Shown piece by piece: positions 3-19,500 of a stretch of 64,000 nucleotides of DNA. Origin of the DNA: Bugula neritina (Eukaryota > Animalia > Bryozoa); assembly GCA_964035545.1 (NCBI GenBank), contig OZ037769.1:10508633-10572632 (forward strand), given 5' to 3'. The translations under genes and the position numbers were made by a program. The notes below the pieces were generated by a model. The model saw only the letters and a program-made list of their open reading frames with translations. It was not told the origin of the DNA and ran no database searches. How positions within the stretch are numbered: the first letter of the stretch is position 1; each line of letters begins with the position of its first letter.

Positions 3-3000
3 GTGAGTCGGCCGCAAGGCCCACCAATACCTCCGGCTTGGGCACTCAAAAACCGCTTTGAAGGTTTGCTTGATGAGGGAGTGAACGACGAATGGGAGCA
101 CAACAGGGATTTTCCTCGGTTGCCCACACGAGCATCAGTCCGAGAATTCACTCGGCCGCCCGTGTGTGAGCGAGACCGAGACGTACCCTGCCCGCCCATG
201 CAACGTCGACGACCCCCTCGCAACCGAAAAGCACAGGTGCATCCCCAATTCCATGCACATGAGGTGTCGCCTCAAGAGACAAATCGCTCAGTGAGCGCCC
301 AGCCATATGGAAGCAGCTATTTCCTCCCCGGCAAAATTGCTGGTAAAGCTGCCACATTCCTGTTGGATACTGGGTGTACCACAAATCTACTGAGTCGACG
401 TCTCTTCGATACTCTCAGTGCCAAGGACAGGGCTAGCCTAGAACCATATGAGGGGGAACACGGCACGTTGGCGGACGGGTCGTGTATTCCTTTCTATGGG
501 GTAATCCAGTTGACTGGTAGAGTCCGTGATCAGATGATCAGTGAGACCTTCATCGTCAGTCAACTCAAGGAGGATGCCATCTTGGGCATGCCATTTCTGA
601 AGCGACACAGGTGCTACATCGACTTTAGCAAGTCGGCAGTAGTGATGGCGGGGCGTGAGCTGGCCTGTGTCGACCGATTTGGCCGACCCTTGGTGGGGGG
701 AGTGCAGGTGGTACAGCGCTGTACTGTACCTGGGCGCTCCCGGGCTACAGTTCGCTGCAGAGTGAACTGTAGGGAGATCTCCGAGCTCGGAGTGGTGGAA
801 GGTGCACTGGGGGGCGTCCAGCTCGCTAACAGTCTGAATAGACTGGATGAGCGGAGGGAGTTCCTGGTCCAGTGTGTAAACCCTTTCACGGAGCCGGTAG
901 AATTACCGGCTGGGTCTCTAGTAGGGAAGTTCCACTCCGTGCAAGAGGAGGATGTAGGGCCCGCGCTGGAAACAGCGGGCGGTGCCCGGGGAGTACCCAC
1001 TAGAGACGGCAGGGGGCCGGTGCCTGAACACGTAGCAGAGTTGTACGAGGATGCCTGTGATGGCTGCGAGAGCAAGCGAGAACGCCTGGAGATGGCGCGG
1101 CTACTCTCTGAGTACAAGGATGTGTTCAGTTGCGGCGACCATGACATGGGTCTGACTGAGACGGTTCGTCATGAGATACCCCTGGCGGCGGGGACGGTGC
1201 CGATTCGGCAGCCGACCCGCCGGTTAGGTCCTGAGAAGGAGAGAGAAGTGAGCCGTCAGGTGCAAGACCTTCTGAACCGGGACCTGATTGAGCCAGGCCA
1301 TGGGGCCTGGAGTTCTCCAGTCGTCCTGGTTCGGAAAAAGGATGGTAGCTGGAGGTTTTGCGTTGATTATCGCAGGCTGAACAGCGTGACCATCCAGGAC
1401 GCTTACCCTCTCCCGAGGATCGATGAGTCGCTCGATGCCTTAGCTGGTAGCAAGTTCTTCAGCACGTTAGACTTGTTAAGCGGGTATTGGCAGGTGCCCC
1501 TGAGTCCTGAAGCACAGGACAAGGCCGCGTTTATAACGCGGGATGGGCTCTGGAAATGGAAGGTGTTGCCATTCGGACTTACGTCCGCACCAGCCACCTT
1601 CCAGCGACTCATGGAGCAGGTCCTGAGTGGACTGCACTGGAAGACCTTGCTCATATATCTCGATGATGTCATCGTCATCTCCCCCGACTTCGACACACAT
1701 GTCAGTCGACTCAGGGAGGTGTTCGACAGACTCCGAGCTGCTAACCTGAAGCTGAAGCCCTCGAAGTGTGCATTACTGCAACGCGAGGTCAAGTACCTGG
1801 GCCATGTAGTTGGTCGAGACGGGGTCGCCACCGACCCCGAGAAGGTACGGGCCGTGAGGGACTGGGCCGTTCCTGTCGACCTCTCTGAATTGCGGGCGTT
1901 CCTGGGGCTGGTAGGGTACTATCGTCAGTACATACCAGGCTTCGCAGGAATTGCACAGCCGTTAAATCGGCTGACCGCAAAGGGGGTGCGATGGCAGTGG
2001 ACGCAGGTTGAGCAGAAGGCATTTGACCACCTGAAGGATCGCCTGGTGGAAGCACCCATCTTGGCGTATCCTGACCCTGCGAAGGAGTACATTTTGGATA
2101 CTGATGCCAGTAACCATAATGTGGGGGCTGTGCTATCGCAGGTCCAAGATGGTCGCGAGGTGGTGGTGGCTTACTATAGCAAGGCCCTGTCGGCGCCTGA
2201 GAAGAACTACTGTACAACCAGGAGGGAACTCTTGGCAGTAGTCAAGGCGGTCAAACACTTTAGACCATATCTATATGGGCGCACATTCCGGCTTCGGACG
2301 GATCATGCGTCCCTGATATGGCTGTGTCGACGGGCAGAACCATCCAGCCAAGTGGCGCGCTGGCTAGAGATCCTGGCAGAGTTTTCTTATCGGATCGAGC
2401 ATCGACCCGGTAAGAAACACGGTAATGCAGATGGACTCAGCCGCCGCCAGGCAGATGGGTGTAAGCAATGCCAGAATATCGAGCGCAGGGACGGTGGACC
2501 CCCTCGCTCGGACGTCGAAGCGCAGTTGGGGAAAGCGGGTGTGTACAGCTGGGAAGAAGGGCAACTCCTGTCCGAATCACCCAACAAAGCTGTTAACAAC
2601 CTTCACGCAAACCCCACGTTGCTTCGGAACGTCAGGGAGCTATGCCGGCTCCAGTCCACGCTACCAGGAGTGGTAGCTGACCTAGTCCGGGCCAAGAAGG
2701 AGGGACGGCGGCCGAGTGAGGCCGAACAGCGAGTGAAGAGTACTGAGTTTAAGTACTTCTGTGACCGCTGGGACTCCCTAAGGTTCAACAGCGATGGGCT
2801 GCTAACGATTACGTTGGCAGTCGGCACCAATCGCAGTGAACGAGAGAGGGTAGTCTGCCCGTCAGCTCTGCGGCGGGAGTTGATCTGGGACACCCATAAG
2901 CAAGCTCACGCAGGAGCTAGCCGGGTGATCAGGTGTCTTCAACTCCAGTGGTTTTGGCCCGGTATGACCCGGGATGTCCGACTCCGGGTGCGGAAGTGCG

Positions 3001-4352
3001 AGGTGTGCCAAGCTAGTAAGCATGGCCGCCCCACTGAGACCGCAGGGAGGCGTCGCCTCCATGCCGGTCGTCCGTGGCAGGTGGTTGCTGTCGATCTGGT
3101 AGGCCCCATGCCCACTACAGCGAGAGGTAATAACTGGATACTGGTATTAACTGACCATTTCACGCGGTGGTCTGATGCACTGGCCATTCCAGATGCGTCG
3201 GCCCCCTCGGTGGCCAGAGCTCTGGATCAACAGGTGTTCTGCTATTTCGGCTTGCCGGAGCAGATACACTCTGACCAGGGCGCCCAGTTTCAGTCGCAAC
3301 TTATGAGCGATCTCTGTAGAATGTGGGGGGTAAACCAGAGTCGGACGACCCCGTATCACCCGCAAGGGAACGGGGTCGTGGAGCGGAACAACCGAATGCT
3401 AGGGGACTCTCTGAGAAGCCTGCTTATCGGTAGGAGCCAGGAAGAGTGGGACTTGGTGTTGCCGCAGATCATGCGAGCGTACCGTAGTACCCCTCACTCC
3501 AGTACACTGGAGACCCCTAATTTTCTCATGCTGGGGAGAGAAACAAGGGTTCCTGAGCACGTAACCTATCATGTTCCGAATCCAGAGAGCAATGTCCACG
3601 ACTACGTGGACAAGCTCGTAAACTGCATGGGGACGGCTCACGAGGTGCTACGTGAGCAGCAGTGGCAGGTCAGGAGTGGTGACTCTGACGACCCACCCTT
3701 ATACAAGGTGGGGGACTGGGTCTGGATGACCAGTCATCGCCGCAGGCGCGGACAGGCAGCCAAGTTGCAGCCGAAGTTCGTAGGTCCCTACTGCGTAATT
3801 GAGGTAATGCCAAATCATACATACAAAGTGGAACGGTCTGGACAAGTGTCGGTCCAGAACGAGGCACGGCTTAAACCTCACTGGGCGAGTCCTGATGCGG
3901 CAGGTCAAGCACCTCCTCTCTTAGAGCCAGCTAGGCGCCCTCCTATGAGGGGGCGGCCCATGGCATATCGAGAGATTGAGGAGATACTGCCAGACCAGGA
4001 CGGGGCGGCTGATGCGTCAGCCGACCAGCCCCAACCTCCTCCACCCCAGGAAGAGGAGGTCGACGCACCTGAAGACCTGTCGGAGCCGGCCCCACCACCT
4101 GTGGAGCCGGTCGACAGGCCCATCGTTCCGGATGAGATGGAAATTCCTCAGGATACTGAGGGAGAGGCAGCTGGGGGAGGGCCACCCGTACTGGTGGACC
4201 CCCCCGTACTGGCGACACCACCCATGGTGGAAGAGTCGCCAGTCGCAGCAAACTCCCCGGTACCGTTGGACCGTAGCCAACGTACCAGGGCGCCACCATC
4301 TTATTTAAAAGACTTCTTGTGTGACTTGGTCGACATGCACAGTATTCTGTAG
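3..4352 (+). CDS. Gypsy Pol polyprotein (protease, RT, RNase H, integrase with GPY/F); open at the left edge
   Basis: Protease FLLDTG; RT LPFGL and YLDD; RNase H ILDTDAS and RTDH; integrase HKQAH...CEVC, VDLVG, SDQG, VERNN; KLQPKFVGPY. Domain order is Ty3/Gypsy. Confidence 0.97.
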   Translation: MSRPQGPPIPPAWALKNRFEGLLDEGVNDEWEHNRDFPRLPTRASVREFTRPPVCERDRDVPCPPMQRRRPPRNRKAQVHPQFHAHEVSPQETNRSVSAQPYGSSYFLPGKIAGKAATFLLDTGCTTNLLSRRLFDTLSAKDRASLEPYEGEHGTLADGSCIPFYGVIQLTGRVRDQMISETFIVSQLKEDAILGMPFLKRHRCYIDFSKSAVVMAGRELACVDRFGRPLVGGVQVVQRCTVPGRSRATVRCRVNCREISELGVVEGALGGVQLANSLNRLDERREFLVQCVNPFTEPVELPAGSLVGKFHSVQEEDVGPALETAGGARGVPTRDGRGPVPEHVAELYEDACDGCESKRERLEMARLLSEYKDVFSCGDHDMGLTETVRHEIPLAAGTVPIRQPTRRLGPEKEREVSRQVQDLLNRDLIEPGHGAWSSPVVLVRKKDGSWRFCVDYRRLNSVTIQDAYPLPRIDESLDALAGSKFFSTLDLLSGYWQVPLSPEAQDKAAFITRDGLWKWKVLPFGLTSAPATFQRLMEQVLSGLHWKTLLIYLDDVIVISPDFDTHVSRLREVFDRLRAANLKLKPSKCALLQREVKYLGHVVGRDGVATDPEKVRAVRDWAVPVDLSELRAFLGLVGYYRQYIPGFAGIAQPLNRLTAKGVRWQWTQVEQKAFDHLKDRLVEAPILAYPDPAKEYILDTDASNHNVGAVLSQVQDGREVVVAYYSKALSAPEKNYCTTRRELLAVVKAVKHFRPYLYGRTFRLRTDHASLIWLCRRAEPSSQVARWLEILAEFSYRIEHRPGKKHGNADGLSRRQADGCKQCQNIERRDGGPPRSDVEAQLGKAGVYSWEEGQLLSESPNKAVNNLHANPTLLRNVRELCRLQSTLPGVVADLVRAKKEGRRPSEAEQRVKSTEFKYFCDRWDSLRFNSDGLLTITLAVGTNRSERERVVCPSALRRELIWDTHKQAHAGASRVIRCLQLQWFWPGMTRDVRLRVRKCEVCQASKHGRPTETAGRRRLHAGRPWQVVAVDLVGPMPTTARGNNWILVLTDHFTRWSDALAIPDASAPSVARALDQQVFCYFGLPEQIHSDQGAQFQSQLMSDLCRMWGVNQSRTTPYHPQGNGVVERNNRMLGDSLRSLLIGRSQEEWDLVLPQIMRAYRSTPHSSTLETPNFLMLGRETRVPEHVTYHVPNPESNVHDYVDKLVNCMGTAHEVLREQQWQVRSGDSDDPPLYKVGDWVWMTSHRRRRGQAAKLQPKFVGPYCVIEVMPNHTYKVERSGQVSVQNEARLKPHWASPDAAGQAPPLLEPARRPPMRGRPMAYREIEEILPDQDGAADASADQPQPPPPQEEEVDAPEDLSEPAPPPVEPVDRPIVPDEMEIPQDTEGEAAGGGPPVLVDPPVLATPPMVEESPVAANSPVPLDRSQRTRAPPSYLKDFLCDLVDMHSIL

Positions 4353-4592
4353 CATGGCGACATTCACAAAGGAGTCTGGGGGAGCGAGGTAATTGATAGC
4401 AGGCGACCCAGTGGCGGATTGAATAGGTCAGCCGGGGGTCAGCAGAGCGTAGCCAAATCACAGCGTATAGGGTGTTACATAAGCACTCTAGCTGTGAGCG
4501 CTCTTTTCAATTACAGCTAGCAAACAGGCAGCACGTCTTTTGCAATAAATAATTTGGCTATCTACGAGCCCTAAGAAAGCAGCAGCATCATT

Positions 4593-5543
4593 ATGTCTAA
4601 TGCAGCAACTGTTTTGGGGGGTGAGACTGAGCCTGTATCCGACGAGATACAGGCATTACTTGACACGCCTACGACTAACTGGGACAGCATGTCAGAAGCA
4701 GGGGTAGACATGCTGTCCGACATACATTTAGCAACATTTACGGACTCCCCGACACACACTGCGATGCAAATTGATACCAACGACTTGACTGATGACTTGA
4801 CTGTAGCCAAGGACACTACTCTAGCACTACCAAGAGCCTTACTGGGACGGACTAACTGGACGACTCGACGGACTCGAACATTGATAGAAGCAATAGTAGG
4901 GACGGACGACAATAGACAATGCACTGAATGTAGAAGAATACTATCGACTACTAGGAGACTGAGAATACACGTTCCACAACACTTTACTGTGACTTTCTGT
5001 CCCTGCGGAGTTCACCACTTCTGCAGGGACACGATACTGAGACACCAACGAACTAGAGACTGTTACGTAGGGCACTTGTATGAAGTCGACGCAGACTCTT
5101 ACACGGAGTTCCGGGACCTAATACTACCCCACGTGACTGACCCGGACCGACGACAGACTCTCCTGGACCACTTCCCCGCTACCCGACCTACAGTAGAGAG
5201 TGACTCTGATGCAGACCCCCAACCCTCCGAAACAACGACTACCTACCCTCCAGACGTAACCACCCAACCTCTACGCGTCGTAGTAACCCGTGCTGGACGC
5301 GCTGTGACGAAGGACTCACAACCCCCAACGACGACAATCTCCTATGTACCCCGACACACCCATAAGAAGAAGAGGGGTGCTAGCAACACACCCCGAGATG
5401 ACAGCGACCCTGACCAATCCCTACTAGCCGACATTAGGAAAATACAACGGCGTATGGCTCGCCTCAGTAAGGAACAGAAGCGAGCAACCACCGAGCTGGC
5501 TAAGTTGCAGACCCGACTAGAGAAACGGCTGGCAAAGAAGTGA
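4593..5543 (+). CDS. Retrotransposon accessory ORF: tandem zinc-finger and coiled-coil protein (316 aa)
   Basis: ATG-initiated ORF between pol and the PPT. Contains C-x2-C-x12-H-x3-H (CTECRRILSTTRRLRIHVPQH), a second C-x-C-x12-H-x5-C finger, HKKKR and a C-terminal heptad pattern. Confidence 0.8.
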   Translation: MSNAATVLGGETEPVSDEIQALLDTPTTNWDSMSEAGVDMLSDIHLATFTDSPTHTAMQIDTNDLTDDLTVAKDTTLALPRALLGRTNWTTRRTRTLIEAIVGTDDNRQCTECRRILSTTRRLRIHVPQHFTVTFCPCGVHHFCRDTILRHQRTRDCYVGHLYEVDADSYTEFRDLILPHVTDPDRRQTLLDHFPATRPTVESDSDADPQPSETTTTYPPDVTTQPLRVVVTRAGRAVTKDSQPPTTTISYVPRHTHKKKRGASNTPRDDSDPDQSLLADIRKIQRRMARLSKEQKRATTELAKLQTRLEKRLAKK

Positions 5544-5788: not shown

Positions 5789-6197
5789 TGTGATAGATTT
5801 TAGTAGTGCAAGTATTATGGTATTAATCGAAAAGGTTTACTCTATATTGTTTTATGTATCTTGTGAGTTCGACACTGTCGGAGTGTAGCTATGGGCAGTA
5901 GTGGCACCATTAGTAGCCACCAATCAGGACAATGACATTAATTGATAGCAGGTGGAGCTAGCTACTCGTAGTTGCAGTGCGCTGAGTAGCTAGCCGGCAG
6001 AGCAGCTTGGGACTTCATTTAGAACAGTTGTGTATTAAAGCTCACTAATTATGTAATCGTTTCTATTCATGCTAGCAGTAAATAACCTACTTGTATTTGT
6101 GTAAATAATAAAGTATCTTATCGTAAACAACCTGTCGCAGTGGCTTTGATTAAGTAGACCCACAAATAATAATAGTGAACTGGCAAAATTCACTACA
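5789..6197 (+). repeat. 3' LTR of the Gypsy element (about 409 bp)
   Basis: Starts TGT right after the PPT and ends ACA. Ends are imperfectly inverted (TGTGATAGATTTT vs TGTAGTGAATTTT on the reverse strand). AATAAA at 6107-6112. The partner LTR is not in the window, so the end is inferred. Confidence 0.75.
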
Positions 6198-6479: not shown

Positions 6480-9400
6480 CTATAAATCCAACATCATTTT
6501 ATCCAAAGAAAATTCACTATTGTGAACTACTTGTTCTGCTTCTCCTTCTATGTCTTCCAGTAGTTCATGTTCTGGAGTGAGTACCAACTCAATACTCCTA
6601 AATCTTCCTGCAAAATGTTTAGAGCTTATAGTAGCAATTAAAATATAAAAAAGCTAGAGACACTCTTGACCAATGCTACTCAAACATATCAGTGTACTTG
6701 TGTACTATGAATCCGAGACATTTAAAAAATGACCATTGGAAAGCACCAATAGACAACTGGAAAATAGGCAATTATAAAATGAACATTTGAAAAATAGACT
6801 TTCGGAAAATGAAGAATATTCAACTTTGCCTAGTCCAGATGGGGAGTTCAGCACCTGGCCGGGTTCAAAATAACTTATTGTAAACGTGTGCAATTTTAAA
6901 TTGGAACTATTCAGTAACTAATTCTACTTCCATAATAGGCCTAACTGATTCGATCTTTATATTTATCTTTGAAAGTTATTTTGAACCCGACCAGATGCTG
7001 AACCTCCCCTCTGAACTAGGCCATGTCGAATATTCTTCATTTTCCAAATGTCTATTTTCAAGTTGTCCATTTTCTAATTGTTTATTTTCGGGTTGTCTAT
7101 TGGTGATTTTTCGAAATGTTGTGTCACTAGTAACTACGCCACTCATATGTGCCATTCAAGCTCTTATTAACAACTATGACGCTTCAGCTTTTGCTTTGTA
7201 AAAGGTGCCATGAATTGTCTCACCAACAGGTTTTAAAACATGATTTTGAATGACAAGTTGCTTCATCTCCCTTTTAGTATGGTTTCCTAATTGCTTTGTA
7301 AATTTAATCCTCTGCTGTATTAGATCAGTGACGTGTGCCATCCTCAACAATTTCCTTATAGGCCTCTGAAGGCTTTCCAAATTTTTCCTTTCCTTAACTA
7401 AGTATTGAACATAGTCTGACACCTCCAGCACCTTCTTAGCTTTATAGTCTTTAATTTCGTTAATGAGGTCTTCTGCAGATTTCTTCAATGCCAAAATCTG
7501 CAAACAGCATGTCAACAACTTCATACAATAACAAAGCCTTTGGATAGCCAGACATCCATTTCTTTTACTTTCTCACAAACATTCACTAGCCAAGAGCTTT
7601 TATGTATTTAAACAGAATATTAAAAGAGAAGTAGAAATGACCCAAATGTAAACAAAGCCAGTCTCTCCTCAAGCTATTAACATAATTTGTTAAATGGGGA
7701 GGGGGTACATACAGACACACAGACTGAGTCACCTGTTTGTTCATACGTTTTAGTACTCTGCTTATCATCTTCTCTGAGTCAGACTCTAACTTATCAACTA
7801 CTGACCAAGCATGCTTTTCAGACTGACACAACTTAGTCACTCTGTCTGCTGCGTCGTCTAACAACTCATCAATTTCAGACTTCAACTCTCGTTCAGCTCT
7901 AGCCAAAGATCTAAACTCGTGCTTCTCTCTATCTATCATATAATCATGAATACACTTTACTGGTGAGAGTAAGGGAGTGAGAATAACACAGTGAGAGCTG
8001 CAGAATAACAGAATGATAGTAACAGGATAATAGAGTGAGAATAACAGAGTGAGAGTAACAGAGTGAGAAAAGTAGAGTCAAACAAATAAACTTCTACCTA
8101 GACAATGAAAGTTTAAAGCTTAGAGACCTGCATTATTAGAAGTTTCCAAAAAATACACAAAATTAGCTAAAAAAACAGGTAGCTAGTAAGCAGAACACAT
8201 GTATGCGTTACAAACACAGCGCCTTCAAAACCTATAACACATTCCTAAATGAATATACCAATTTAGACAATTGAATAGCAGTTTCACCTGAAAAAAGTTA
8301 CGAACTTACAGCTTTGTAGTTTTTGAGATTCAAAACTAATTGTCATTTCAACATTCAACACATTAATATCTGCTTCTGGATAAAATATGGCTGGGCATAA
8401 TTGCTGCTTGTAAATGCAACCACATGTTACAATTTTTAATCTCCACGACTGGAGATTTCAAGGAAGAGCAGGAAACCCGAGGCTTCACCTCTCCCACACT
8501 TTAGCGATTTGGTTGAAAAGATATTCCAATAACACTTACCATCTTTCCCACGTGGAGGTAGCTTATCTGTGTAGAAGAAACTTACCTGCGCAGAGGTCAC
8601 CTGGGTCACATCTTGCACAGGTCAACACGTGACACTTGAGACAGGCATGAGATAAATTCTCCCCCAAGTGCTTCTTACAAGCCACTCTACCATAGTAAGC
8701 AGGTCTTTGATAGTAGAGGAAGATATCAACACATACGTGACTGTCTTCAAAGTATGCATCATGTCTCTACAGAACACTCCGTCATTAACAAACAATAACA
8801 TCTGAAGATAGTTGTACATACAGAGTATATGTCTATAGTCTACACCAACCAGTATGTAGTCAAAATAAGTACCAAATCGTGTCCATCGAAAAACCAGGGT
8901 AATGGATGGAGATACTTAATTGGTCACGTATACAGGTAAGTCAAAATCTATGTACTTTAAAACATAATATGTCTAACATCTCTCACTTGAAAGACTCTAA
9001 GTATCCATTCAACTGGAATATCATTATAAAGTTGTGTGAAATGGGTTCACTAGAAGTCAGAAAATGCTATAAATAGAGAAGAGAGCTGAGTAGGTAAAGT
9101 ACCCAGCATTATGTTGTTACAGATTATATTTGTACAGAAATTAACACCTTCCAGAAGGCAATAGACATACTATTGATAGCCAGAGTTTTCTCATACACTG
9201 CGTTACCAAGCTTCGCATTATGTGAATGAATTTTCAGTCGATATTTAGAAAAAGTTACATAGAATGAAGCCACAACCATAAGTTCATCCACAATGCAAGT
9301 CATGGAAACCAGTGATCCAAGTGACAAATCAGGCAGAACTTAAACTATACAACTTAATAAAGATTAGTTGTAATACTAGTTCATGATGAATATTATTCCA

Positions 9401-11149: not shown

Positions 11150-11364
11150 CTAGTCAACTGCTACCATTACTGCTTCTAGTACTACTACTGCTACTGCTAC
11201 TGCTACTGCTACTACTGCTACTGCTACTGCTACTACTGCTACTGCTACTACTACTACTACTGCTACTACTACTACTGCTACTACTACTGCTACTACTGCT
11301 ACTACTACTACTGCTACTACTACTACTGCTACTACTACTACTACTACTGCTACTACTACTACTG

Positions 11365-11396
<32 letters not shown>

Positions 11397-11740
11397 GCTA
11401 TCAACTACTACTATTGCTACTACTGCTATTAACTACTACTGCTGCTACCGCTGCTACTACTATTACTGCTACTGCTATTAACTACTACTGCTGCTGCTAC
11501 TACTATTACTACTACTACCACTACTGCTACTACTACTAGCTTCCACTACAACTACTGCTACCACTACTGCTACTACTATTACCACTACTACTATACTACT
11601 ACTACTGCTAGTACCGCTACTACTACTATTACTACTACTACTATTACTACTACTGCTATTACTACTACTACTATTACTACTACTACTACTGCTCCTACTA
11701 CTAGCCCTTACTACTACTACTACTAGTTATAACTACTGCT
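11150..11740. repeat. (ACT/GCT)n trinucleotide microsatellite
   Basis: Directly visible imperfect ACT/GCT run of about 590 bp. Confidence 0.95.
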
Positions 11741-12518
11741 AGAACATAGGAGCATAATACTACAGTGTTACTAACTAGTACTAATATACTTTGACACCAC
11801 AGCTCCTGCTCTTACTGCCTCTTACTGCCACTACACATTGACACCACTGTTATTACTTTCACTCTGGCCAACAGCAAATACTAAGCCTAGTAGTGTAATT
11901 CCTTTTTTAAAATGGGGAATCCCCATCAAAAATGCTTGCCATTCAGGCAAAGGGTTGCACTCTGCATTCAGGTACCTGGAGCAATATGACGTTGCTTAGC
12001 AGCAGGCCTTATGCTATAGCTAACCCGTTCAACTAATTAGCTTTTAAAATGGTACTTATATGAACATACATACAATTTTGTAGTTTCAACAGTGACTTAC
12101 TGCTAATTTCTTGACATGCAGTAAGAATAAAATATCAGTCTAATTTCTGCTATTTCTATGGCTATGACTCATGGTAGGCCAAGATCATGATAATTAGCCT
12201 ATTCAATGACATGTCAGCTAAAATGAGGTAAGACCTACCTGCATGAGCTACATGAATTCAGTTCCTAATTACCATAGTTGTTTGCTTATATCAAGCAAAT
12301 TTTTGTGCACACCAAGAAGACTGTATTTAGATGCAAAAGTAACTTCTCTTCTACAAGCACAATTTGGCAACTTCCATAACTGTGTTTTATGGTCAGAAGT
12401 GAAGTGAGACCTGTAATTTTTGGTTTGGTACTCAGGTTTGAGGTGACATTGGCTAATTCCACAGACAGACAACTCCTCAAGACTTTACAAATGTCTGGTA
12501 GAACTAACACTTGGTGTA

Positions 12519-12925: not shown

Positions 12926-13239
12926 TACGCTCATTCTGAAAACTGCAACATGCAACTGCTTCCTACTGCTAGGTTAGTGGGTAAATATTCATCATTACTA
13001 TATCTATGACTGCAGACATGCTACTAGCCATACTTACAGCCCATCAACATAATTATAGCCAACTTATTGCATGAGATAATTGTTTGATCTGATAAACCAT
13101 ACTATATATTTAGCCAAATTATATACATTATGATACAAAAATGATATTTACACTTTTTCACACATATTCACTAGTAGAGTATATACATATATAACTAAAT
13201 GTTTTGAGTAGAAAGAGACACTGTGCAATACTCAGTTGC

Positions 13240-13540
13240 TGTACTCTATATGACTCAGTCACCATACTCTATATTACTCAGTCACCAAACTCTATATGAC
13301 TCAGTCAATATACTCTACATAACTCAGTCACTATACTCTATATGACTCAGTCACTATGCTCTATATGACTCAGTCACTATACTCTATATGACTCAGTCAC
13401 TATACTCTATATGACCCAGTCACTATAATCTGTATGACTCAGTCACTATACTCTATATGACCCAGTCACTATAATCTGTATGGCTCAGTCACTATACTCT
13501 ACATGACTCAGTCACTATACTCTATACGACTCGGTCACTC
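13240..13540. repeat. 23-bp minisatellite (ACTCTATATGACTCAGTCACTAT)n in the GTF3C3 3' UTR
   Basis: About 13 tandem copies starting about 15 bp after the stop codon. Confidence 0.92.
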
Positions 13541-13553
13541 AGCATCAATGTGT

Positions 13554-16500
13554 TCATATAACGCAGTGAGTCTGTATGATATGTGATGCCAACTCCTCAG
13601 AGCCACTAGCCTTGTATATGAGTGACAGGTTGAAGGCAGCGTCTCTTCGTAGGTCAAAGTCATCACCATCTAAACATGGTTGTGTTTCCAGACACTTTTT
13701 ATAGTAATAGACAGCAGCAGAGTTGATTGATAACTGCTGCATAGCTCTACCTGTAATACATTATACTACTACATAGCTCTACATGTAATACATTATATTA
13801 CTACATAGCTTTACCTGTAATACATTATATTACTACATAGCTCTACCTGAAATACATTATATTACTATATAGCTTTACCTGCATTACATTATATTACTAC
13901 ATAACTCTACCTGTAATACATTATATTACTACATAGCTCTACCTGTAATACATTATATTACTATATAGCTCTACATGTAATACATTATATTAACTGCTAA
14001 CTTTATTGGTAACTGCATGTCTCCAGTCACTAGAAAATCGACAATTCTTACCAGTCTACTATCCTCGCCCCCTGTACTACTATCCTTACCCCCTGCACTA
14101 CTATCCTCACCCCCTGTACTACTATCCTCACCCCCTGTACTACTATCCTTACCCCCTGCACTACTATCCTCACCCCCTGCACTACTATCCCCAACCCCTG
14201 TACTACTATCCTTCATTCCCTTAAAATAAGCAGAGTAAAATCATTTCTAAACCCAATGGTTTAAAGAATGTCAACATACTTAGCAATTATAAGTAATATA
14301 AGATACAGCATATGTAAATAATAGAATGTATCGGTCACAGTTGCATGATGAGGAACTTACCAATGTTGTAGAAGCTTTCCTGACACTCTCCTCGGAGCTT
14401 AAGATATTTATTAAGGAAACAGACCCCATGTGCAGCAAGAGTAGCCCTCTGAGTGGTGAACTTCATACACACAATGTGTAGAAAGCAGACACCTATGAGC
14501 AGGTTCAGAATAGGAGAGTCCTCTAACTGCTTGTAGGCATTCATAAACTGATCTACAAACATGGTAACAGAATATATACACAGTAGCTATGACAATGGCA
14601 GAAACAGATGGACTAAAAGGATGACTGCAGAAGAAAACTGAGATAATAATTACGCTACATTGTACACAACAGTTTTGAGCCACTTTTGTGTGGCTACCGG
14701 ATATGAATTTCGAGAGTGATTTTTATATTGAATATAATGTGTTACTTTAAAAAAAGAGTATTCATGAAGCCTGCCACTACACACTCCAACAAGAATTTGA
14801 TATTACAAATGCTAGTTCTTTTAAATAAAAGCTTTTTAAGTTTAGAGAGTAAAAATCAAATGAGATGGAAATGAAAACATTATATAAGCTTTCTGTGTCG
14901 TTTTTGTCAAGTCTCTAGTAACTTAGCTTCTCTCAATAGCAGAGGTCAGACAACTCTCAAACTGCAGTGTCAGATAATTACTGAAAGTGGTCACACTTCA
15001 CTGAACAAATTGTAAACTTGTTGTCAGTTGAATTTAGCAACACAAATCATGAAAAAGGTAAGAATGAAACCATTCATTTGATTTATACTAAATTTTGTGT
15101 TTTGAAAACAATTCAAGCATTCGAAGAGAATAGATTTTGAGCAATATTCATGTTCTAAAACCTTGAAATGCATAATAAATTAGAATTACTTTCACAAGAA
15201 AAACATTTCCAGAACTATTACTTCGGCACTATCAACTGTCAACATTGAAATTACAAATTCTAACAACTATGTATCACCTTATATTTGCCTAACTATTGTC
15301 CAATGTATTTAAAACTAGTTCTAATCAGTTTTTAAAAATTTTCAACTTGAATTTGAGTTACAATAACATAAATAGCGTCAATACTTGGTAAAATCCACTA
15401 GCATATTTGCCAAATAGCAGCTTACAAGTATTGCCAAGTTCCACCAATCTTCTATAATATAATATAACTTTTTTTTTCCCCAGAATTTTAGAGTTGACAA
15501 ACTGACTCTAGTCTCTCTTACATACTCGTATGATGGCTAATATACCAAACAAACAGTGCATTGTTTTATGGTAGAGTCATAAGAGACAGACTTACTAATG
15601 GCAGCTCTGTACGAGGTGTAGATGATACTTCCACATCCATGAGCGATACTAAGAACAGCCGAGTTGGGGTACTAAAAGAATATTCAATTATTATAATATC
15701 TGATAGCAACATGGCAGCCCGCCAACACCGTATATAAGCATTATAATTGCACATATGAATACTAGAATATATAACTAATTTAAAATGTAATATGAGCATA
15801 GTTATGGCTTTACTCATTATTTGATACAAAATGAAACAGAAATGCGAAAAGATTTAATTAAAACTCTCAGAACAATTATACTGAGTTGACTACCAAATGA
15901 GTTTCGACTAGAGTTTATACGTATGACATAATGTAGCTGTCAGAATATTGAAATTATTAAAAATAAGCATCCTGAAAATGAGATGTAAAAATGAAATGTT
16001 GCATCTAAAATTAGGCTAGCATGTTGTTGAAACGATCTTTTACAACTTTTGTATCAACAAACATTTTTCATTGTAAAAAGATGAGACAGAAGATCCCGGA
16101 ATGTTTTCCCTTACCTTGCGTAGTTGTCTTTCACTAAACCTTGCAAATCTCATATCGTGTGGAGTAATAGAAGTGATCATGGAGAAGATATTAGCCACCT
16201 GATTCACCCTGTCACCAAGACCAGCATCAGCTATCTATAACACATGTCAGGGGAGCACAAGTACTAGCAAGTGACAGGTGTGAGTATAACACTACTATGA
16301 CCATACATGAATAGTTCCCACAACTGTAACTAGTAAGACGACGCAACTGATGGGGCAGCGGTAAAATATCACTTTTATGACTCCATAATGCAAACAAATC
16401 CTTATAGTAAGGGAGTTTAGAACTACAAACATATAACATAGCAGTTACCTTCATGACAGAATCTCTGATAAGATCAAATGCCGCACCTCCATGTTGTAAC

Positions 16501-19500
16501 AACACATGACTACACATGCATTTAAAGTCCAGTTCCTAAAAACAATACTCAAGCATTTGAAGGTTTGAGACTTATACTACATAAAATATGTGAACTACAG
16601 GCAAATTAAAAAAAGAAAATATAATTTTCGCTGAGATTTGAATACCCGCAATTGTCTGCGTGATAATGGACATCAATATAGACCTTAGGTATACAGTATA
16701 ATACATTAGATATATACAGTATAATACATTAGATATATACAGTATAATACATTAGATATATATAGTATAATACATTAGACATATACAGTATAATACATTA
16801 GATATATACAGTATAATACATTAGATATATATAGTATAATACATTAGATATATAGTATAATACATTAGATATATATAGTATAATACATTAGATATATATA
16901 GTATAATACATTAGATATATATAGTATAATACATTAGATATATATAGTATAATACATTAGACATATAGTATAATACATTAGATATATATAGTATAATACA
17001 TTAGACATATACAGTATAATACATTAGACATATAGTATAATACATTAGATATATACAGTATAATACATTAGATATATACAGTATAATACATTAGATATAT
17101 ACAGTATAATACATTAGATATATACAGTATAATACATTAGACATATGTGTGATGGAAGAGTTATCAGCTTTGCCAAATATCTACACATTTGGATCCATAA
17201 CAATACTCCTTGACTTCACTATACGTATAACACAAACTCGCTAAGCTCTTCCAAACTTACAAAAGAAGTCAAAACCACACTTTTATTTCACTTAAGCAAT
17301 TTTTAAATATGTTTTTAAACATAACATTAACTAAGTACTATGTAATACTTACTGAATACTATGTAATACTTACTGAATAATATGTAATACTTACTGAATA
17401 ATATGTAATACTTACTGAATAATATGTAATACTTACTGAATACTATGTAATACTTACTGAATACTATGTAATACTTACTGAATACTATGTAACACTTACT
17501 TAATACAACATAAAACTTACTGAATACTATGTAATACTTACTGAATAATATGTAATACTTACTGAATAATATGTAACACTTACTGAATAATATGTAACAC
17601 TTACTGAATAATATGTAATACTTACCTAATACAACATAAAATTTACTGAATACTACATAAATACTCACATCACTCCACTGCTTTTTAGAAAAGAAGGCGT
17701 GTGTACAATATCCACTCTTCACTAGTGAGAATAAAGTGTCGTATCTTTTATGCTGATGAGCTGTTTCACAAGCCTGTATCAAAATGATAAGTATAGGAAA
17801 GTGAAAACAGTTTCAATAAAACTGACTGTCAAAACATGTATGCTTGTATGTCATGTCTTATAGACTGCAGTAGGTAAACTGTAACATGTATTATACACTA
17901 TACTATCTGTATTATACACTATACAATCTGCATTATACACTTTACAGTCTGTATTATACACTATACAGTCTGTATTATACACTATACAGTCTGTATTATA
18001 CACTATATAGTCTGTATTATACACTATACAGTCTGGATTATACACTATACAGTCTGTATTATACACTATACAGTCTGTATTATACACTATACAGTCTGTA
18101 TTATACACTATACAGTCTGTATTATACACTATACAGTCCGTATTATACACTATACAGTCCGTATTATACACTATACAGTCTGTATTATACACTATACAGT
18201 CTGTATTATACACTATACAGTCTGTATTATACACTATACAGTCTGTATTATACACTATACAGTCTGTATTATACACTATGCAGTCTGTATTATACACTAT
18301 ACAGTCTGTATTATACACTATACAGTCTGTATTATACACTATACAGTCTTTATTATACACTATACAGTCTGTATTATACACTATACAGTCTGTATTATAC
18401 ACTATACAGTCTGTATTATAAACTATACAGTCTGTGTATACATGAAGCTATTATATACCATACTGCAGCTTGCATAACACATGTATGTAATTTTCATATG
18501 CATAGGATGATCACAATGTGTTAGTTATTTCACGTTTAGCACAAAGAGTACACCAACAGCATGTGACTTACTTTATTGAATAAATCCCAGCACTCATTTT
18601 CTGTGAGAGAATTTTCACCCGAGACCAGAGCAGGAGCTGAAGTGGAAAATATAACCTAGTCTGAGTTGAGATAACCTAGTCTGAGTTGAGATAACCTAGT
18701 CTGAGTTGAGATAACCTAGTTTGAGTTGAGATAACCTAGTCTGAGTTGAGATAACCTAGTCTGAGTTGAGATAACCTAGTTTGAGTTGAGATAACCTAGT
18801 CTGAGTTGAGATAACCTAGTCTGAGTTGAGATAACCTAGTTTGAGTTGAGATAATTTAGTCTGAGTTGAGATAGGTGAATTCAGCACACCAGAAACAAGC
18901 ACTATACAAGAGATGACAATTCTTTACCCAAAGCTATAAGCACAAGTTGCAATGTCTAAACCTCACAGTAAATGTTATTTGGTGCTGGCTACTTATTTAT
19001 ATTATAGCAGATAATAACATCTCATAAACTGATATTTGATATAATAAAAGTGGTTATGTAAAATATATATGAATATAACACTTACGAGTCTTGTACACTT
19101 CATCATAGTCTGGTAAAATCCTGCGCAGGTATGTTATTCTCCCTTTGTATGGACGACATGCCATCAAGGCTACAATAGTATCAATAGTCTATACTTTATA
19201 CTATAGTATATAACTACATTAGATAATGTATGCGTATTACATGATGTATAATGATGGAGCGTTATATCTTATAGCAATACATATTTTACAATAACTACAC
19301 CATGCAGCACCCATGTATTATATGATATAATATATTATATATTACCACATATGATGAAACAACTACCTTATATAATACATGTAGTTACACATATTACTAT
19401 TATTCAATACAGGCTTGAAAAATAAACAAAGTACAATTACCTGCTTCGTGCTCCACAATTATGTGAGGTGGTAGTTGGCCAAAGAGCAAATATTGAACAT

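What the first reader, a model, noticed from the sequence alone, without database searches (positions are those of the whole stretch)
4390..4516. Degenerate copy of the LTR promoter region upstream of the accessory ORF: candidate internal promoter
Seen: the exact 14-mer TAATTGATAGCAGG occurs at 4390-4403 and in the LTR at 5939-5952. Colinear similarity continues downstream: CAGTGGCGGATTGAATAGGTCAGCCGGGGGTCAGCAGAGCGTAGC internally versus CAGTGCGCTGAGTAGCTAGCCGGCAGAGCAGC in the LTR. The internal copy is followed by TATA-like TACATAAG (4476) and Inr-like TCAATT (4507). Established: foamy viruses use an internal promoter to make Tas, which activates both that promoter and the LTR. Inference: the shared motif could be the zinc-finger protein's binding site, giving a two-promoter autoregulatory circuit in an invertebrate retrotransposon.
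Basis: partly seen in the sequence, partly recalled or inferred. Interest (0 to 1): 0.8.

Follow-up and report, generated by a model that had tools for sequence, protein, structure and literature searches.

The report
LTR-like spacer before retrotransposon accessory gene
A jumping gene of the gypsy type carries a strongly conserved 240-base stretch, in front of its extra zinc-finger gene, that shares a 14-base word with the element's own promoter region; this stretch may be a second, internal promoter, but no transcript data were available to show it.

Summary
TAATTGATAGCAGG is exact at 4390-4403 and 5939-5952. The second site lies in a true 409-bp 3' LTR (5789-6197) of a 7.6-kb Ty3/gypsy element, about 125 bp upstream of the LTR's likely start site. 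Against shuffles, the 14-mer is unlikely for this pair of regions (about 0.004). The colinear similarity after it is marginal (about 0.01), and it fades in diverged subfamilies.

New facts:
- The 240-nt pol-ORF3 spacer is as conserved as pol and far more conserved than ORF3 or the LTR.
- The window copy precisely lacks a 243-nt GT..AG intron that 36 other copies carry just after ORF3 codon 10, so ORF3 is a spliced gene.
- ORF3 has two C2H2-type fingers.

An internal promoter is my leading reading (about 0.38). A splice-acceptor or structured-RNA module used by LTR-driven transcripts is nearly as likely (about 0.32). No transcript data could be reached. Binding of the zinc-finger protein to the motif is untested, and the two motif copies do not clearly co-vary.

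Another reader of this scan noted an intron-containing copy of the accessory gene elsewhere in this genome.

The parts
3..4352 (+). pol (protease, RT, RNase H, integrase) of a Ty3/gypsy-type LTR retrotransposon; the 5' LTR, primer-binding site and gag lie upstream of the window
   Evidence: ORF list; Pfam RVT_1, RT_RNaseH, rve, Integrase_H2C2, Asp_protease_2; upstream part read in L031
4353..4592 (+). non-coding pol-ORF3 spacer, the conserved cis-acting module under study
   Evidence: 73-88% identity in subfamilies whose ORF3 is 33-77% and LTR 35-72% identical in 150-nt windows; indels are not multiples of three
4390..4403 (+). internal copy of the 14-mer TAATTGATAGCAGG
   Evidence: core TAATTGATAG kept in most of 20 diverged spacers
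4389..4396 (+). GTAATTGA, 5' arm of a predicted long-range stem
   Evidence: MFE fold z -3.4; RNAalifold keeps the stem; 95% of cells paired; UA to CG compensatory change in one clade
   Evidence: pair GC to AU in 2 sequences
4507..4514 (+).
   Evidence: this block is the only part of the spacer still alignable in the distant family L049
4593..5543 (+). accessory ORF3, 316 aa: two tandem C2H2-type zinc fingers, a basic KKKR stretch (a possible nuclear localisation signal) and a C-terminal helical heptad region (a likely coiled coil). In this copy exon 1 (4593-4620) is already joined to exon 2 (4621 onward)
   Evidence: no Pfam hit; relatives found only in contigs carrying the same kind of element
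4620..4621 (+). exon-exon junction: a 243-nt GTAAGT..TTGCAG intron (241-273 nt in other subfamilies) is precisely absent here
   Evidence: 36 intron-containing against 4 intron-less junctions in the genome
5777..5788 (+). polypurine tract
   Evidence: sequence; it directly precedes the LTR start defined by the 5' LTR copy
5789..6197 (+). 3' LTR with conserved CCAAT (5920-5924), TATA-like TATTAAAG (6033-6040) and AATAAA (6107-6112)
   Evidence: 100% identical 5' LTR; alignment of diverged LTRs
5939..5952 (+). LTR (U3) copy of the 14-mer, 14 nt downstream of the CCAAT box

Best explanation
The 240-nt spacer between pol and the accessory zinc-finger gene is a conserved cis-regulatory module. Most likely it acts as an internal, subgenomic promoter.

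Proposed layout:
- An upstream element, the 14-mer shared with LTR U3, sits about 120 nt before the start site.
- A weak TATA-like TACATAA follows.
- Transcription starts near 4509.
- The first exon is about 110 nt and carries the ATG at 4593.
- A promoter-proximal intron of about 243 nt follows. It is removed in this copy.
- The rest of ORF3 comes next, with polyadenylation in the 3' LTR.

Shown: the shared word, the conservation of the spacer, the intron, and the zinc fingers.

Inferred: that transcription starts here, and that the same factor acts at both copies of the word. That factor could be a host factor (the word contains homeodomain-like TAAT and GATA-like TGATAG cores) or the element's own protein.
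For: - The exact 14-mer is unlikely by chance for this pair of regions: 8 of 2000 and 3 of 500 shuffles reach the score.
- The anchored downstream similarity is above shuffles and real-sequence controls. It aligns spacer TACATAAG with LTR TATTAAAG, and spacer TTTTCAATTACAGCTAGCA with LTR TTTCTATTCATGCTAGCA.
- The distance from the 14-mer to the putative start is similar in both places, 119 against about 125 nt.
- The spacer is as conserved as pol coding sequence, while the flanking ORF3 and LTR diverge fast.
- The core TAATTGATAG persists at the internal site in most diverged copies. A related word persists in the LTRs of several subfamilies whose LTRs are only 62-73% identical.
- An intron 28 nt after the ATG fits an independent Pol II unit with a short first exon.
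- No pyrimidine-rich acceptor at a fixed position upstream of the ATG is shared by all subfamilies.
- Precedent: foamy viruses drive their transactivator from an internal promoter (PMC8670036, PMC4929722).
Against: - There is no transcript evidence of any kind. The public contigs that carry relatives and reach this region still hold the intron, so they are not spliced transcripts.
- The extended LTR resemblance is marginal and is absent in diverged subfamilies. The distant family L049 shows none.
- The two motif copies vary independently in several subfamilies. In one clade the second copy lies upstream of the polypurine tract, not in the LTR.
- TACATAA is a poor TATA box, and it sits in a conserved hairpin loop.
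- The intron-less full-length copy shows that LTR-driven RNA runs through the spacer and is spliced there.
- The known norm is that ORF3s of LTR elements come from spliced LTR-driven messages (PMC5408684, PMC10309623).
Confidence: 0.38

Rival explanations
1. The spacer works at the RNA level in LTR-driven transcripts. It would provide the splice acceptor of a small internal exon (about 4517-4620) that carries the ORF3 start codon. It may also be a folded element that controls splicing, nuclear export of the intron-containing genomic RNA, or translation of ORF3. ORF3 would then be made from a multiply spliced subgenomic mRNA, as for retroviral env or accessory genes and Cer1 CERV. The 14-mer could then be an RNA site present twice in the genomic RNA, or its LTR match could be incidental.
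For: - The spacer folds better than all 200 shuffles (z -3.4).
- The stem GUAAUUGA:UCAAUUAC and the GGGUG:CACUC hairpin are kept in 95% of cells. There are a few compensatory and many G-U-preserving changes, and the covariation score exceeds nearly all shuffles.
- CTCTTTTCAATTACAG|C resembles the element's own intron acceptor CTCTATTGCAG|G. This block is the only spacer segment conserved in the distant family L049, where it reads TTCGTTCATTCCAATCGCAG|C.
- The intron-less full-length copies prove that full-length RNA is spliced here.
- Most copies keep the intron, so genomic RNA must normally escape splicing. In Cer1 the accessory protein solves this same problem (PMC10309623).
- ORF3s of LTR elements are usually expressed from spliced messages (PMC5408684).
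Against: - Covariation is modest: 3-5 pairs with double changes, and the count of such pairs is not above shuffles. An 8-bp inverted repeat in 240 nt is expected by chance about 0.4 times.
- The AG after the pyrimidine tract is not at a fixed column in all subfamilies.
- No convincing conserved donor was found in the leader.
- Three guessed leader-to-ORF3 junctions have no retro-copies in the genome. This negative result is weak.
- This model does not explain the match to U3.
- There is no Rfam match.
Confidence: 0.32
2. The resemblance to the LTR is a chance match in an AT-containing regulatory word. It was made exact by one recent substitution. The spacer is conserved for reasons unrelated to the LTR.
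For: - In older subfamilies the internal word ends in CATG or TATG rather than CAGG, so 14/14 identity is recent.
- The extended similarity has z of only about 2.5 in the focal clade and about 0-1 elsewhere.
- Repeated 14-mers occur by chance at the scale of the window.
- The comparison was chosen after the fact.
Against: - Even the older state is 12-13 of 14.
- The restricted comparison gives about 0.004.
- A related word recurs near the 3' end of the element in almost every subfamily examined.
Confidence: 0.15
3. The spacer is a relic of a former 3' LTR (part of U3 plus R). It would have been left inside the element when an ancestor captured the zinc-finger gene, with its intron, by read-through and recombination. 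The similarity would then reflect origin, whatever the present function.
For: - The resemblance is colinear from the 14-mer through the TATA-like box to an AATAAA-like word at matching offsets.
- There is a purine-rich run just upstream of the internal 14-mer.
- The intron in ORF3 is unusual for a retroelement gene.
Against: - The first 150 nt of an LTR and its end are missing.
- The similarity is weak and not seen with diverged LTRs.
- The spacer AATAAA is not conserved.
- The intron and the exon 1 donor are also present in the distant family L049, so any capture would be very old.
- No host homologue of ORF3 was found outside these elements.
Confidence: 0.15

Closest known systems
Foamy virus internal promoter and Tas transactivator (Spumaretrovirinae)
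   Same: In both, a second regulatory region lies inside the element, upstream of a nucleic-acid-binding accessory gene placed 3' of pol. In foamy viruses Tas acts on both the internal promoter and the LTR (PMC8670036, PMC4929722). Here a word is shared between the spacer and U3.
   Different: The foamy internal promoter lies within env, and its activity and Tas binding are shown by experiment. Here nothing is shown at the transcript or binding level. The protein is a C2H2-type zinc-finger protein unrelated to Tas, the host is an invertebrate, and the element is a Ty3/gypsy retrotransposon without env.
Cer1 (C. elegans Ty3/gypsy element) and its CERV protein
   Same: Both are invertebrate Ty3/gypsy elements with a lineage-restricted accessory ORF after pol. 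Both proteins have a cysteine-rich putative zinc finger, a basic nuclear-localisation-like motif and a helical zipper region. CERV is made from a spliced mRNA, and the genomic RNA keeps usable splice sites (PMC10309623).
   Different: CERV is a five-exon product that borrows gag exons and is needed for export of unspliced genomic RNA. Here only one intron is documented. No donor in gag or the leader was found, there is no sequence similarity to CERV, and the function is untested.
Spliced env/ORF3 mRNAs of errantiviruses and other LTR retrotransposons with a third ORF
   Same: Both have a third ORF downstream of pol. Such ORFs are described as separate units usually expressed from spliced messages (PMC5408684).
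   Different: ORF3 here is not an envelope, esterase or exonuclease. It carries its own conserved intron directly after the start codon, preceded by a 240-nt spacer conserved as strongly as pol.
Retrotransposed spliced copies of retroelements
   Same: An intron-less full-length copy sits beside many intron-containing ones, showing that spliced RNA can be reverse transcribed and integrated.
   Different: I did not find a paper describing this for a Ty3/gypsy accessory-gene intron in the two searches made. The comparison rests on general knowledge, not on a test.

Membership tests
Ty3/gypsy LTR retrotransposon | Two identical or near-identical LTRs with TG..CA ends, a target-site duplication, a primer-binding site after the 5' LTR and a polypurine tract before the 3' LTR | tested here: met
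   409-bp LTRs 100% identical, ATAT duplication, TGGTGGCAGCGGTGGGAT after the 5' LTR, AGGTGAGGAGAG before the 3' LTR
Ty3/gypsy LTR retrotransposon | pol domain order protease - RT - RNase H - integrase | tested here: met
   Pfam hits in this order along the 1449-aa ORF
Retroelement with an internal (subgenomic) promoter, foamy-virus type | Transcripts that start inside the element, upstream of the accessory gene | not testable with these tools
   No transcript data. The public contigs that carry relatives and reach this region still hold the intron, so they are not spliced transcripts; the others begin inside exon 2
Retroelement with an internal (subgenomic) promoter, foamy-virus type | Core promoter elements at the internal site | tested here: inconclusive
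   TACATAA and TCAATT are conserved with 31-nt spacing, but both are weak matches and both also fit a conserved RNA fold or a splice acceptor
Retroelement with an internal (subgenomic) promoter, foamy-virus type | The element's own transactivator acts on both the internal promoter and the LTR | not testable with these tools
   Only a shared word is seen. The two copies do not clearly co-vary
Accessory gene expressed from spliced mRNA (retroviral env / Cer1 CERV type) | Functional splice sites within the element, used in vivo | tested here: met
   A canonical GTAAGT..TTGCAG intron is present in 36 copies and precisely absent in 4, including this one
Accessory gene expressed from spliced mRNA (retroviral env / Cer1 CERV type) | A donor in the leader or gag joined to an acceptor upstream of the accessory ORF | tested here: inconclusive
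   Candidate acceptor at 4516 or 4527. No convincing conserved donor. No retro-copies of three guessed junctions
C2H2 zinc-finger nucleic-acid-binding protein | C-x2-C-x12-H-x3-H spacing with invariant ligands, in tandem | tested here: met
   C110, C113 and H130 are invariant; H126 is kept in all but one, probably decayed, copy. The second finger is C136-x-C138-x12-H151-x5-C157. The profile matches designed and Sall-type C2H2 fingers, best E 3.3e-6. The single sequence is below Pfam threshold

The most novel reading that the evidence does not exclude
An invertebrate Ty3/gypsy retrotransposon runs a foamy-virus-like two-promoter circuit. Its own C2H2 zinc-finger protein, made from an internal promoter in the pol-ORF3 spacer, binds the TAATTGATAG-type word in both the spacer and LTR U3 and so controls its own synthesis and that of the genomic RNA.
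Probability: 0.1. Interest if true: 0.8.

Novelty: new variant of a known kind. Interest (0 to 1): 0.45.

Why it matters
Regulatory accessory genes are the hallmark of complex retroviruses, and internal promoters are known essentially from foamy viruses. An invertebrate LTR retrotransposon with all of the following would be a tractable, independent example of how retroelements evolve self-regulation:
- a conserved nucleic-acid-binding accessory gene;
- a conserved intron that must be kept in the genomic RNA;
- a spacer conserved as strongly as pol.

That would hold whether the mechanism proves to be an internal promoter (Tas-like) or control of splicing and export (Rev- or CERV-like). As it stands, this is a well-defined hypothesis with clear tests, not a demonstrated mechanism.

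Tried and rejected
- Transcript evidence. An exact look-up of ORF3 found nothing. The word search found 33 relatives. Of the contigs I fetched, those that reach this region still carry the intron, and the others begin inside exon 2. They give no 5' ends.
- Retro-copies of a subgenomic mRNA. Three guessed junctions between a leader donor and the ORF3 region had no match in the genome. This is weak, because the donor was only guessed.
- A gag donor (CAG|GTAC) joined to ORF3 exon 2. Rejected, because the reading phases do not match (phase 2 against phase 1, worked out).
- L016 and L018, which lack the spacer. One is a 390-bp internal deletion without GT..AG ends. The other is a copy cut off at its 5' side, next to an unrelated reverse-transcriptase-like sequence. 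Neither is a spliced form.
- A second polypurine tract as the reason for the purine run before the internal 14-mer. It is not a copy of the 3' tract.
- A polyadenylation signal in the spacer (AATAAA at 4545). It is not conserved among subfamilies.
- The canonical TATAAAA found 20-25 nt before the ATG in several older subfamilies. It is lost in the youngest, most numerous subfamily and lies too close to the ATG.
- Known RNA families: none.
- Pfam, the solved-structure search and the protein atlas with the single ORF3 sequence: no clear hit.
- ATG depletion of the spacer as a sign of a scanned leader: not consistent across copies.

Full report
**1. What the locus is**

The window opens inside pol of a Ty3/gypsy-type LTR retrotransposon. 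The long ORF 3-4352 carries protease, reverse transcriptase, RNase H and integrase domains in that order.

A search of the window's own genome places a 409-bp repeat at window 5789-6197. An identical copy lies 1031-1439 nt upstream of the window start. Reading that upstream stretch shows TG..CA ends, a primer-binding site, gag, and the same ATAT on both outer flanks. A purine run directly precedes 5789.

After the pol stop come:
- a 240-nt non-coding spacer (4353-4592);
- a 316-aa ORF (4593-5543);
- about 245 nt of untranslated sequence;
- the polypurine tract and the 3' LTR.

I did not check that.

**2. The observation**

The 14-mer is exact at 4390-4403 and 5939-5952. It occurs 187 times in the genome and its reversed control never does. 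The listed places I could match to fetched loci all lie in copies of this element.

For spacer against LTR, the local alignment score of the 14-mer was reached by 8 of 2000 dinucleotide shuffles and by 3 of 500 in a repeat. At the scale of the whole window an exact 14-mer pair is not unusual; one search shows an unrelated one in the first 20 kb. The figure therefore only means something because the two regions are the element's obvious regulatory regions.

I then removed the 14-mer and aligned the 189 nt that follow it in each place.
- The global score was 1, against -17 +/- 6 for dinucleotide shuffles (3 of 1000).
- Shuffles that keep local composition gave -11 to -14 (2-21 of 1000).
- Only 2 of 378 real control segments from the host or the element reached it.

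This alignment puts spacer TACATAAG opposite LTR TATTAAAG. It puts spacer TTTTCAATTACAGCTAGCA opposite LTR TTTCTATTCATGCTAGCA. It also puts an AATAAA-like word opposite the LTR's AATAAA region.

**3. Anatomy of the LTR**

I aligned LTRs from subfamilies that are only 62-73% identical. The conserved blocks are:
- a CCAAT box (5920-5924);
- the 14-mer region 14 nt after it;
- GGCAGAG;
- AGTTGTGTAT..AAA (TATA-like, 6033-6040);
- ATTATGTAATCG;
- an AATAAA (6107-6112);
- a U5 block.

This places the 14-mer in U3, about 125 nt before the likely start site. In the spacer the 14-mer is 119 nt before A4509 of TCAATT.

**4. Conservation**

In copies whose ORF3 exon 2 is 82-88% and whose LTR 5' part is 67-89% identical to this copy, the spacer is 93-97% identical.

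Sliding windows against five more distant elements show the spacer at 73-88%, like pol. ORF3 is at 33-77% and the LTR at 35-72%. Indels in the spacer are not multiples of three, so it is non-coding and under constraint. This is the firmest new result: the spacer does something.

**5. Does the shared word behave like one functional site present twice?**

*Internal site.* The core TAATTGATAG is kept in most of the 20 spacers. The last four bases differ: CATG or TATG in older subfamilies, and ACAG/ACAT in intermediate ones. The 14/14 identity is therefore confined to the youngest subfamily.

*LTR site.* The word reads TAATTGATAGCAGG, TAATTAATAGCAGG, TAATTGATATCAGG, TAATTAGTAGTAGG, CAATTGATGAGTAGG or CAATTAGTAGTAAG. 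The variants at the two sites are mostly independent of each other. One position (C or T at base 11) changes in parallel in one clade, with one exception.

*Exceptions.* In the clade of L041, L042 and L057, the best second site lies about 28 nt upstream of the polypurine tract, outside the LTR. In a distant family from a metagenome contig (L049, ORF3 40% identical, same primer-binding site), spacer and LTR share no significant word.

*Extended resemblance.* The similarity of section 2 has z 1.9-2.5 only with LTRs of the window's clade, and z 0.05-1.1 with diverged LTRs.

A related word near both ends of the ORF3 region is thus a persistent feature. The evidence that it is one site kept in step at two places is thin.

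**6. A second reason for conservation: RNA structure**

As RNA the spacer folds to -77 kcal/mol, against -63 +/- 4 for shuffles (z -3.4).

It places TACATAA in the loop of a GGGUG:CACUC hairpin (4470-4488).

RNAalifold keeps both helices on 16 and on 20 sequences.
- 95% of cells stay paired.
- The outer stem has a UA to CG double change in one clade and several G-U-preserving changes.
- The hairpin has a GC to AU change.
- The covariation score exceeds 496-500 of 500 column shuffles.
- The number of pairs with double changes does not exceed the shuffles.

The tool itself warns that related sequences can exceed the shuffles without any structure. I therefore call the structure suggestive. No Rfam family matches.

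**7. The intron, which this copy lacks**

In every other well-matching copy, the match to the window breaks at 4620|4621 and resumes 241-273 nt later. The extra piece is a canonical intron, GTAAGTCTACTA ... CTCTATTGCAG. It is 243 nt long in the nearest relatives. It lies in phase 1 after the 28th coding base of ORF3.

Genome-wide, 36 junctions carry the intron and 4 are precisely intron-less. The four are this copy and three copies of an older clade, all with pol upstream. The nearest relatives of this copy (98-100% identical over ORF3 and the LTR) have the intron. The loss here is therefore recent and separate from the older one.

This shows three things:
- The intron is spliced in vivo.
- Full-length LTR-driven RNA runs through the spacer and can be spliced there.
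- Genomic RNA is normally packaged unspliced.

The 5' end of the intron and the donor context are conserved even in L049.

**8. The accessory protein**

The single ORF3 sequence has no Pfam hit. The word search found 33 relatives; every contig I fetched for them carries the same kind of element.

Their alignment shows an invariant core with C-x2-C-x12-H-x3-H followed by C-x-C-x12-H-x5-C, then EFRDLILPH. A profile of the alignment matches tandem C2H2 fingers of designed and Sall-type proteins, best E 3.3e-6. A basic KKKR stretch (a possible nuclear localisation signal) and a C-terminal heptad helix (a likely coiled coil) follow.

"Zinc-finger protein" is therefore supported. What it binds, DNA or RNA, is unknown.

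**9. How ORF3 is most likely expressed**

Two models fit.

*(a) Internal promoter.* This model rests on the shared U3 word, the weak colinear likeness that includes the TATA-like and start-like elements at matching offsets, the conservation of the whole spacer, and an intron just after a short first exon. The foamy virus precedent is established (PMC8670036, PMC4929722).

*(b) Splicing from an LTR-driven transcript.* In this model CTCTTTTCAATTACAG|C is the acceptor of a roughly 105-nt internal exon that carries the ATG, and the fold is a regulator of splicing, export or translation. This is the usual way for third ORFs of LTR elements (PMC5408684). It is also how Cer1 of C. elegans makes CERV, a nuclear, cysteine-rich protein needed to export unspliced genomic RNA (PMC10309623). 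The only spacer block still alignable in L049 is exactly this pyrimidine-CAAT-CAG block.

Against (b):
- I found no convincing conserved donor in the leader.
- Three guessed junctions have no retro-copies.
- The AG is not at a fixed column across subfamilies.

Against (a):
- There are no transcript data.
- The TATA is poor.
- The LTR likeness decays in diverged subfamilies.

My estimates are 0.38 for (a), 0.32 for (b), 0.15 for a chance match, and 0.15 for a relic of an old LTR without a role of its own in the resemblance. The last can coexist with (a) or (b).

**10. Novelty and verdict**

LTR retrotransposons with third ORFs, and retroelements with regulatory accessory genes, are known. What is new here is the combination: a C2H2 accessory gene, a conserved intron at its start, a spacer conserved like pol with a U3-like word, and retro-copies that have lost the intron. 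I rate it a new variant of a known kind.

The promoter reading is plausible but unproven. The autoregulatory circuit is speculation (about 0.1).

Noticed in passing
window 4620-4621: This copy of the retrotransposon precisely lacks the 243-nt intron of its accessory gene, although its nearest relatives (98-100% identical over ORF3 and the LTR) have it. Four intron-less against 36 intron-containing junctions were found in the genome, from at least two separate losses. This is a record of retrotransposition of spliced full-length RNA.
   Followed up: yes
window 11150-11760, 13184-14233, 16601-18913: Several long tandem arrays lie in the host DNA downstream of the element. One is a run rich in ACT/GCT triplets. 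The others are minisatellites with periods of 20, 21, 23 and 32 nt and up to 27 copies in register.
   Followed up: no
L049:2770-5320 (JGI metagenome 3300003318 contig): This is a distant family with the same primer-binding site and gene order. Its ORF3 is 40% identical. Its LTR is 719 bp with a clear TATAAAAG. The exon 1 donor GGTAAGTCCACTAGA is conserved, but the gene caller read a 479-aa ORF straight through the region. The contig runs LTR then gag, so it was assembled across a repeat or from tandem elements.
   Followed up: partly
L042 (reverse strand) about 7842-7884; also L041 and L057: In this clade a 14-mer-like word (TAATTAATAGCAGG, one mismatch) sits about 28 nt upstream of the polypurine tract in the 3' untranslated region, instead of inside the LTR. 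A 34-nt match to the 5' side of the element supports the LTR start.
   Followed up: partly
L016 (G000:C6:10712162-10712210 region): This copy has a deletion of about 390 bp that removes the end of pol and the whole spacer, including the internal 14-mer. It joins GGGCCACC to AGCATCATTATG without GT..AG ends.
   Followed up: partly
L018 (G000:C5:9208600-9209300): This copy is cut off about 20 nt before the ORF3 start codon. It abuts an unrelated sequence that looks like part of a non-LTR reverse transcriptase.
   Followed up: no
window 4568-4581 and the same place in L036-L045: Older subfamilies carry a canonical TATAAAA or TATATAA 20-25 nt before the ORF3 start codon. The youngest and most numerous subfamily has TAAGAAA there.
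   Followed up: partly
L047, L048 (Logan SRR4125604, SRR4020085): These contigs carry an ORF3 relative only 36% identical. It is preceded by an AT-rich intron-like stretch ending in CTCCTGTTGAAG and followed by a purine run and an LTR starting TGTGGTAGATTTTGG. The source organism is unknown to me.
   Followed up: no
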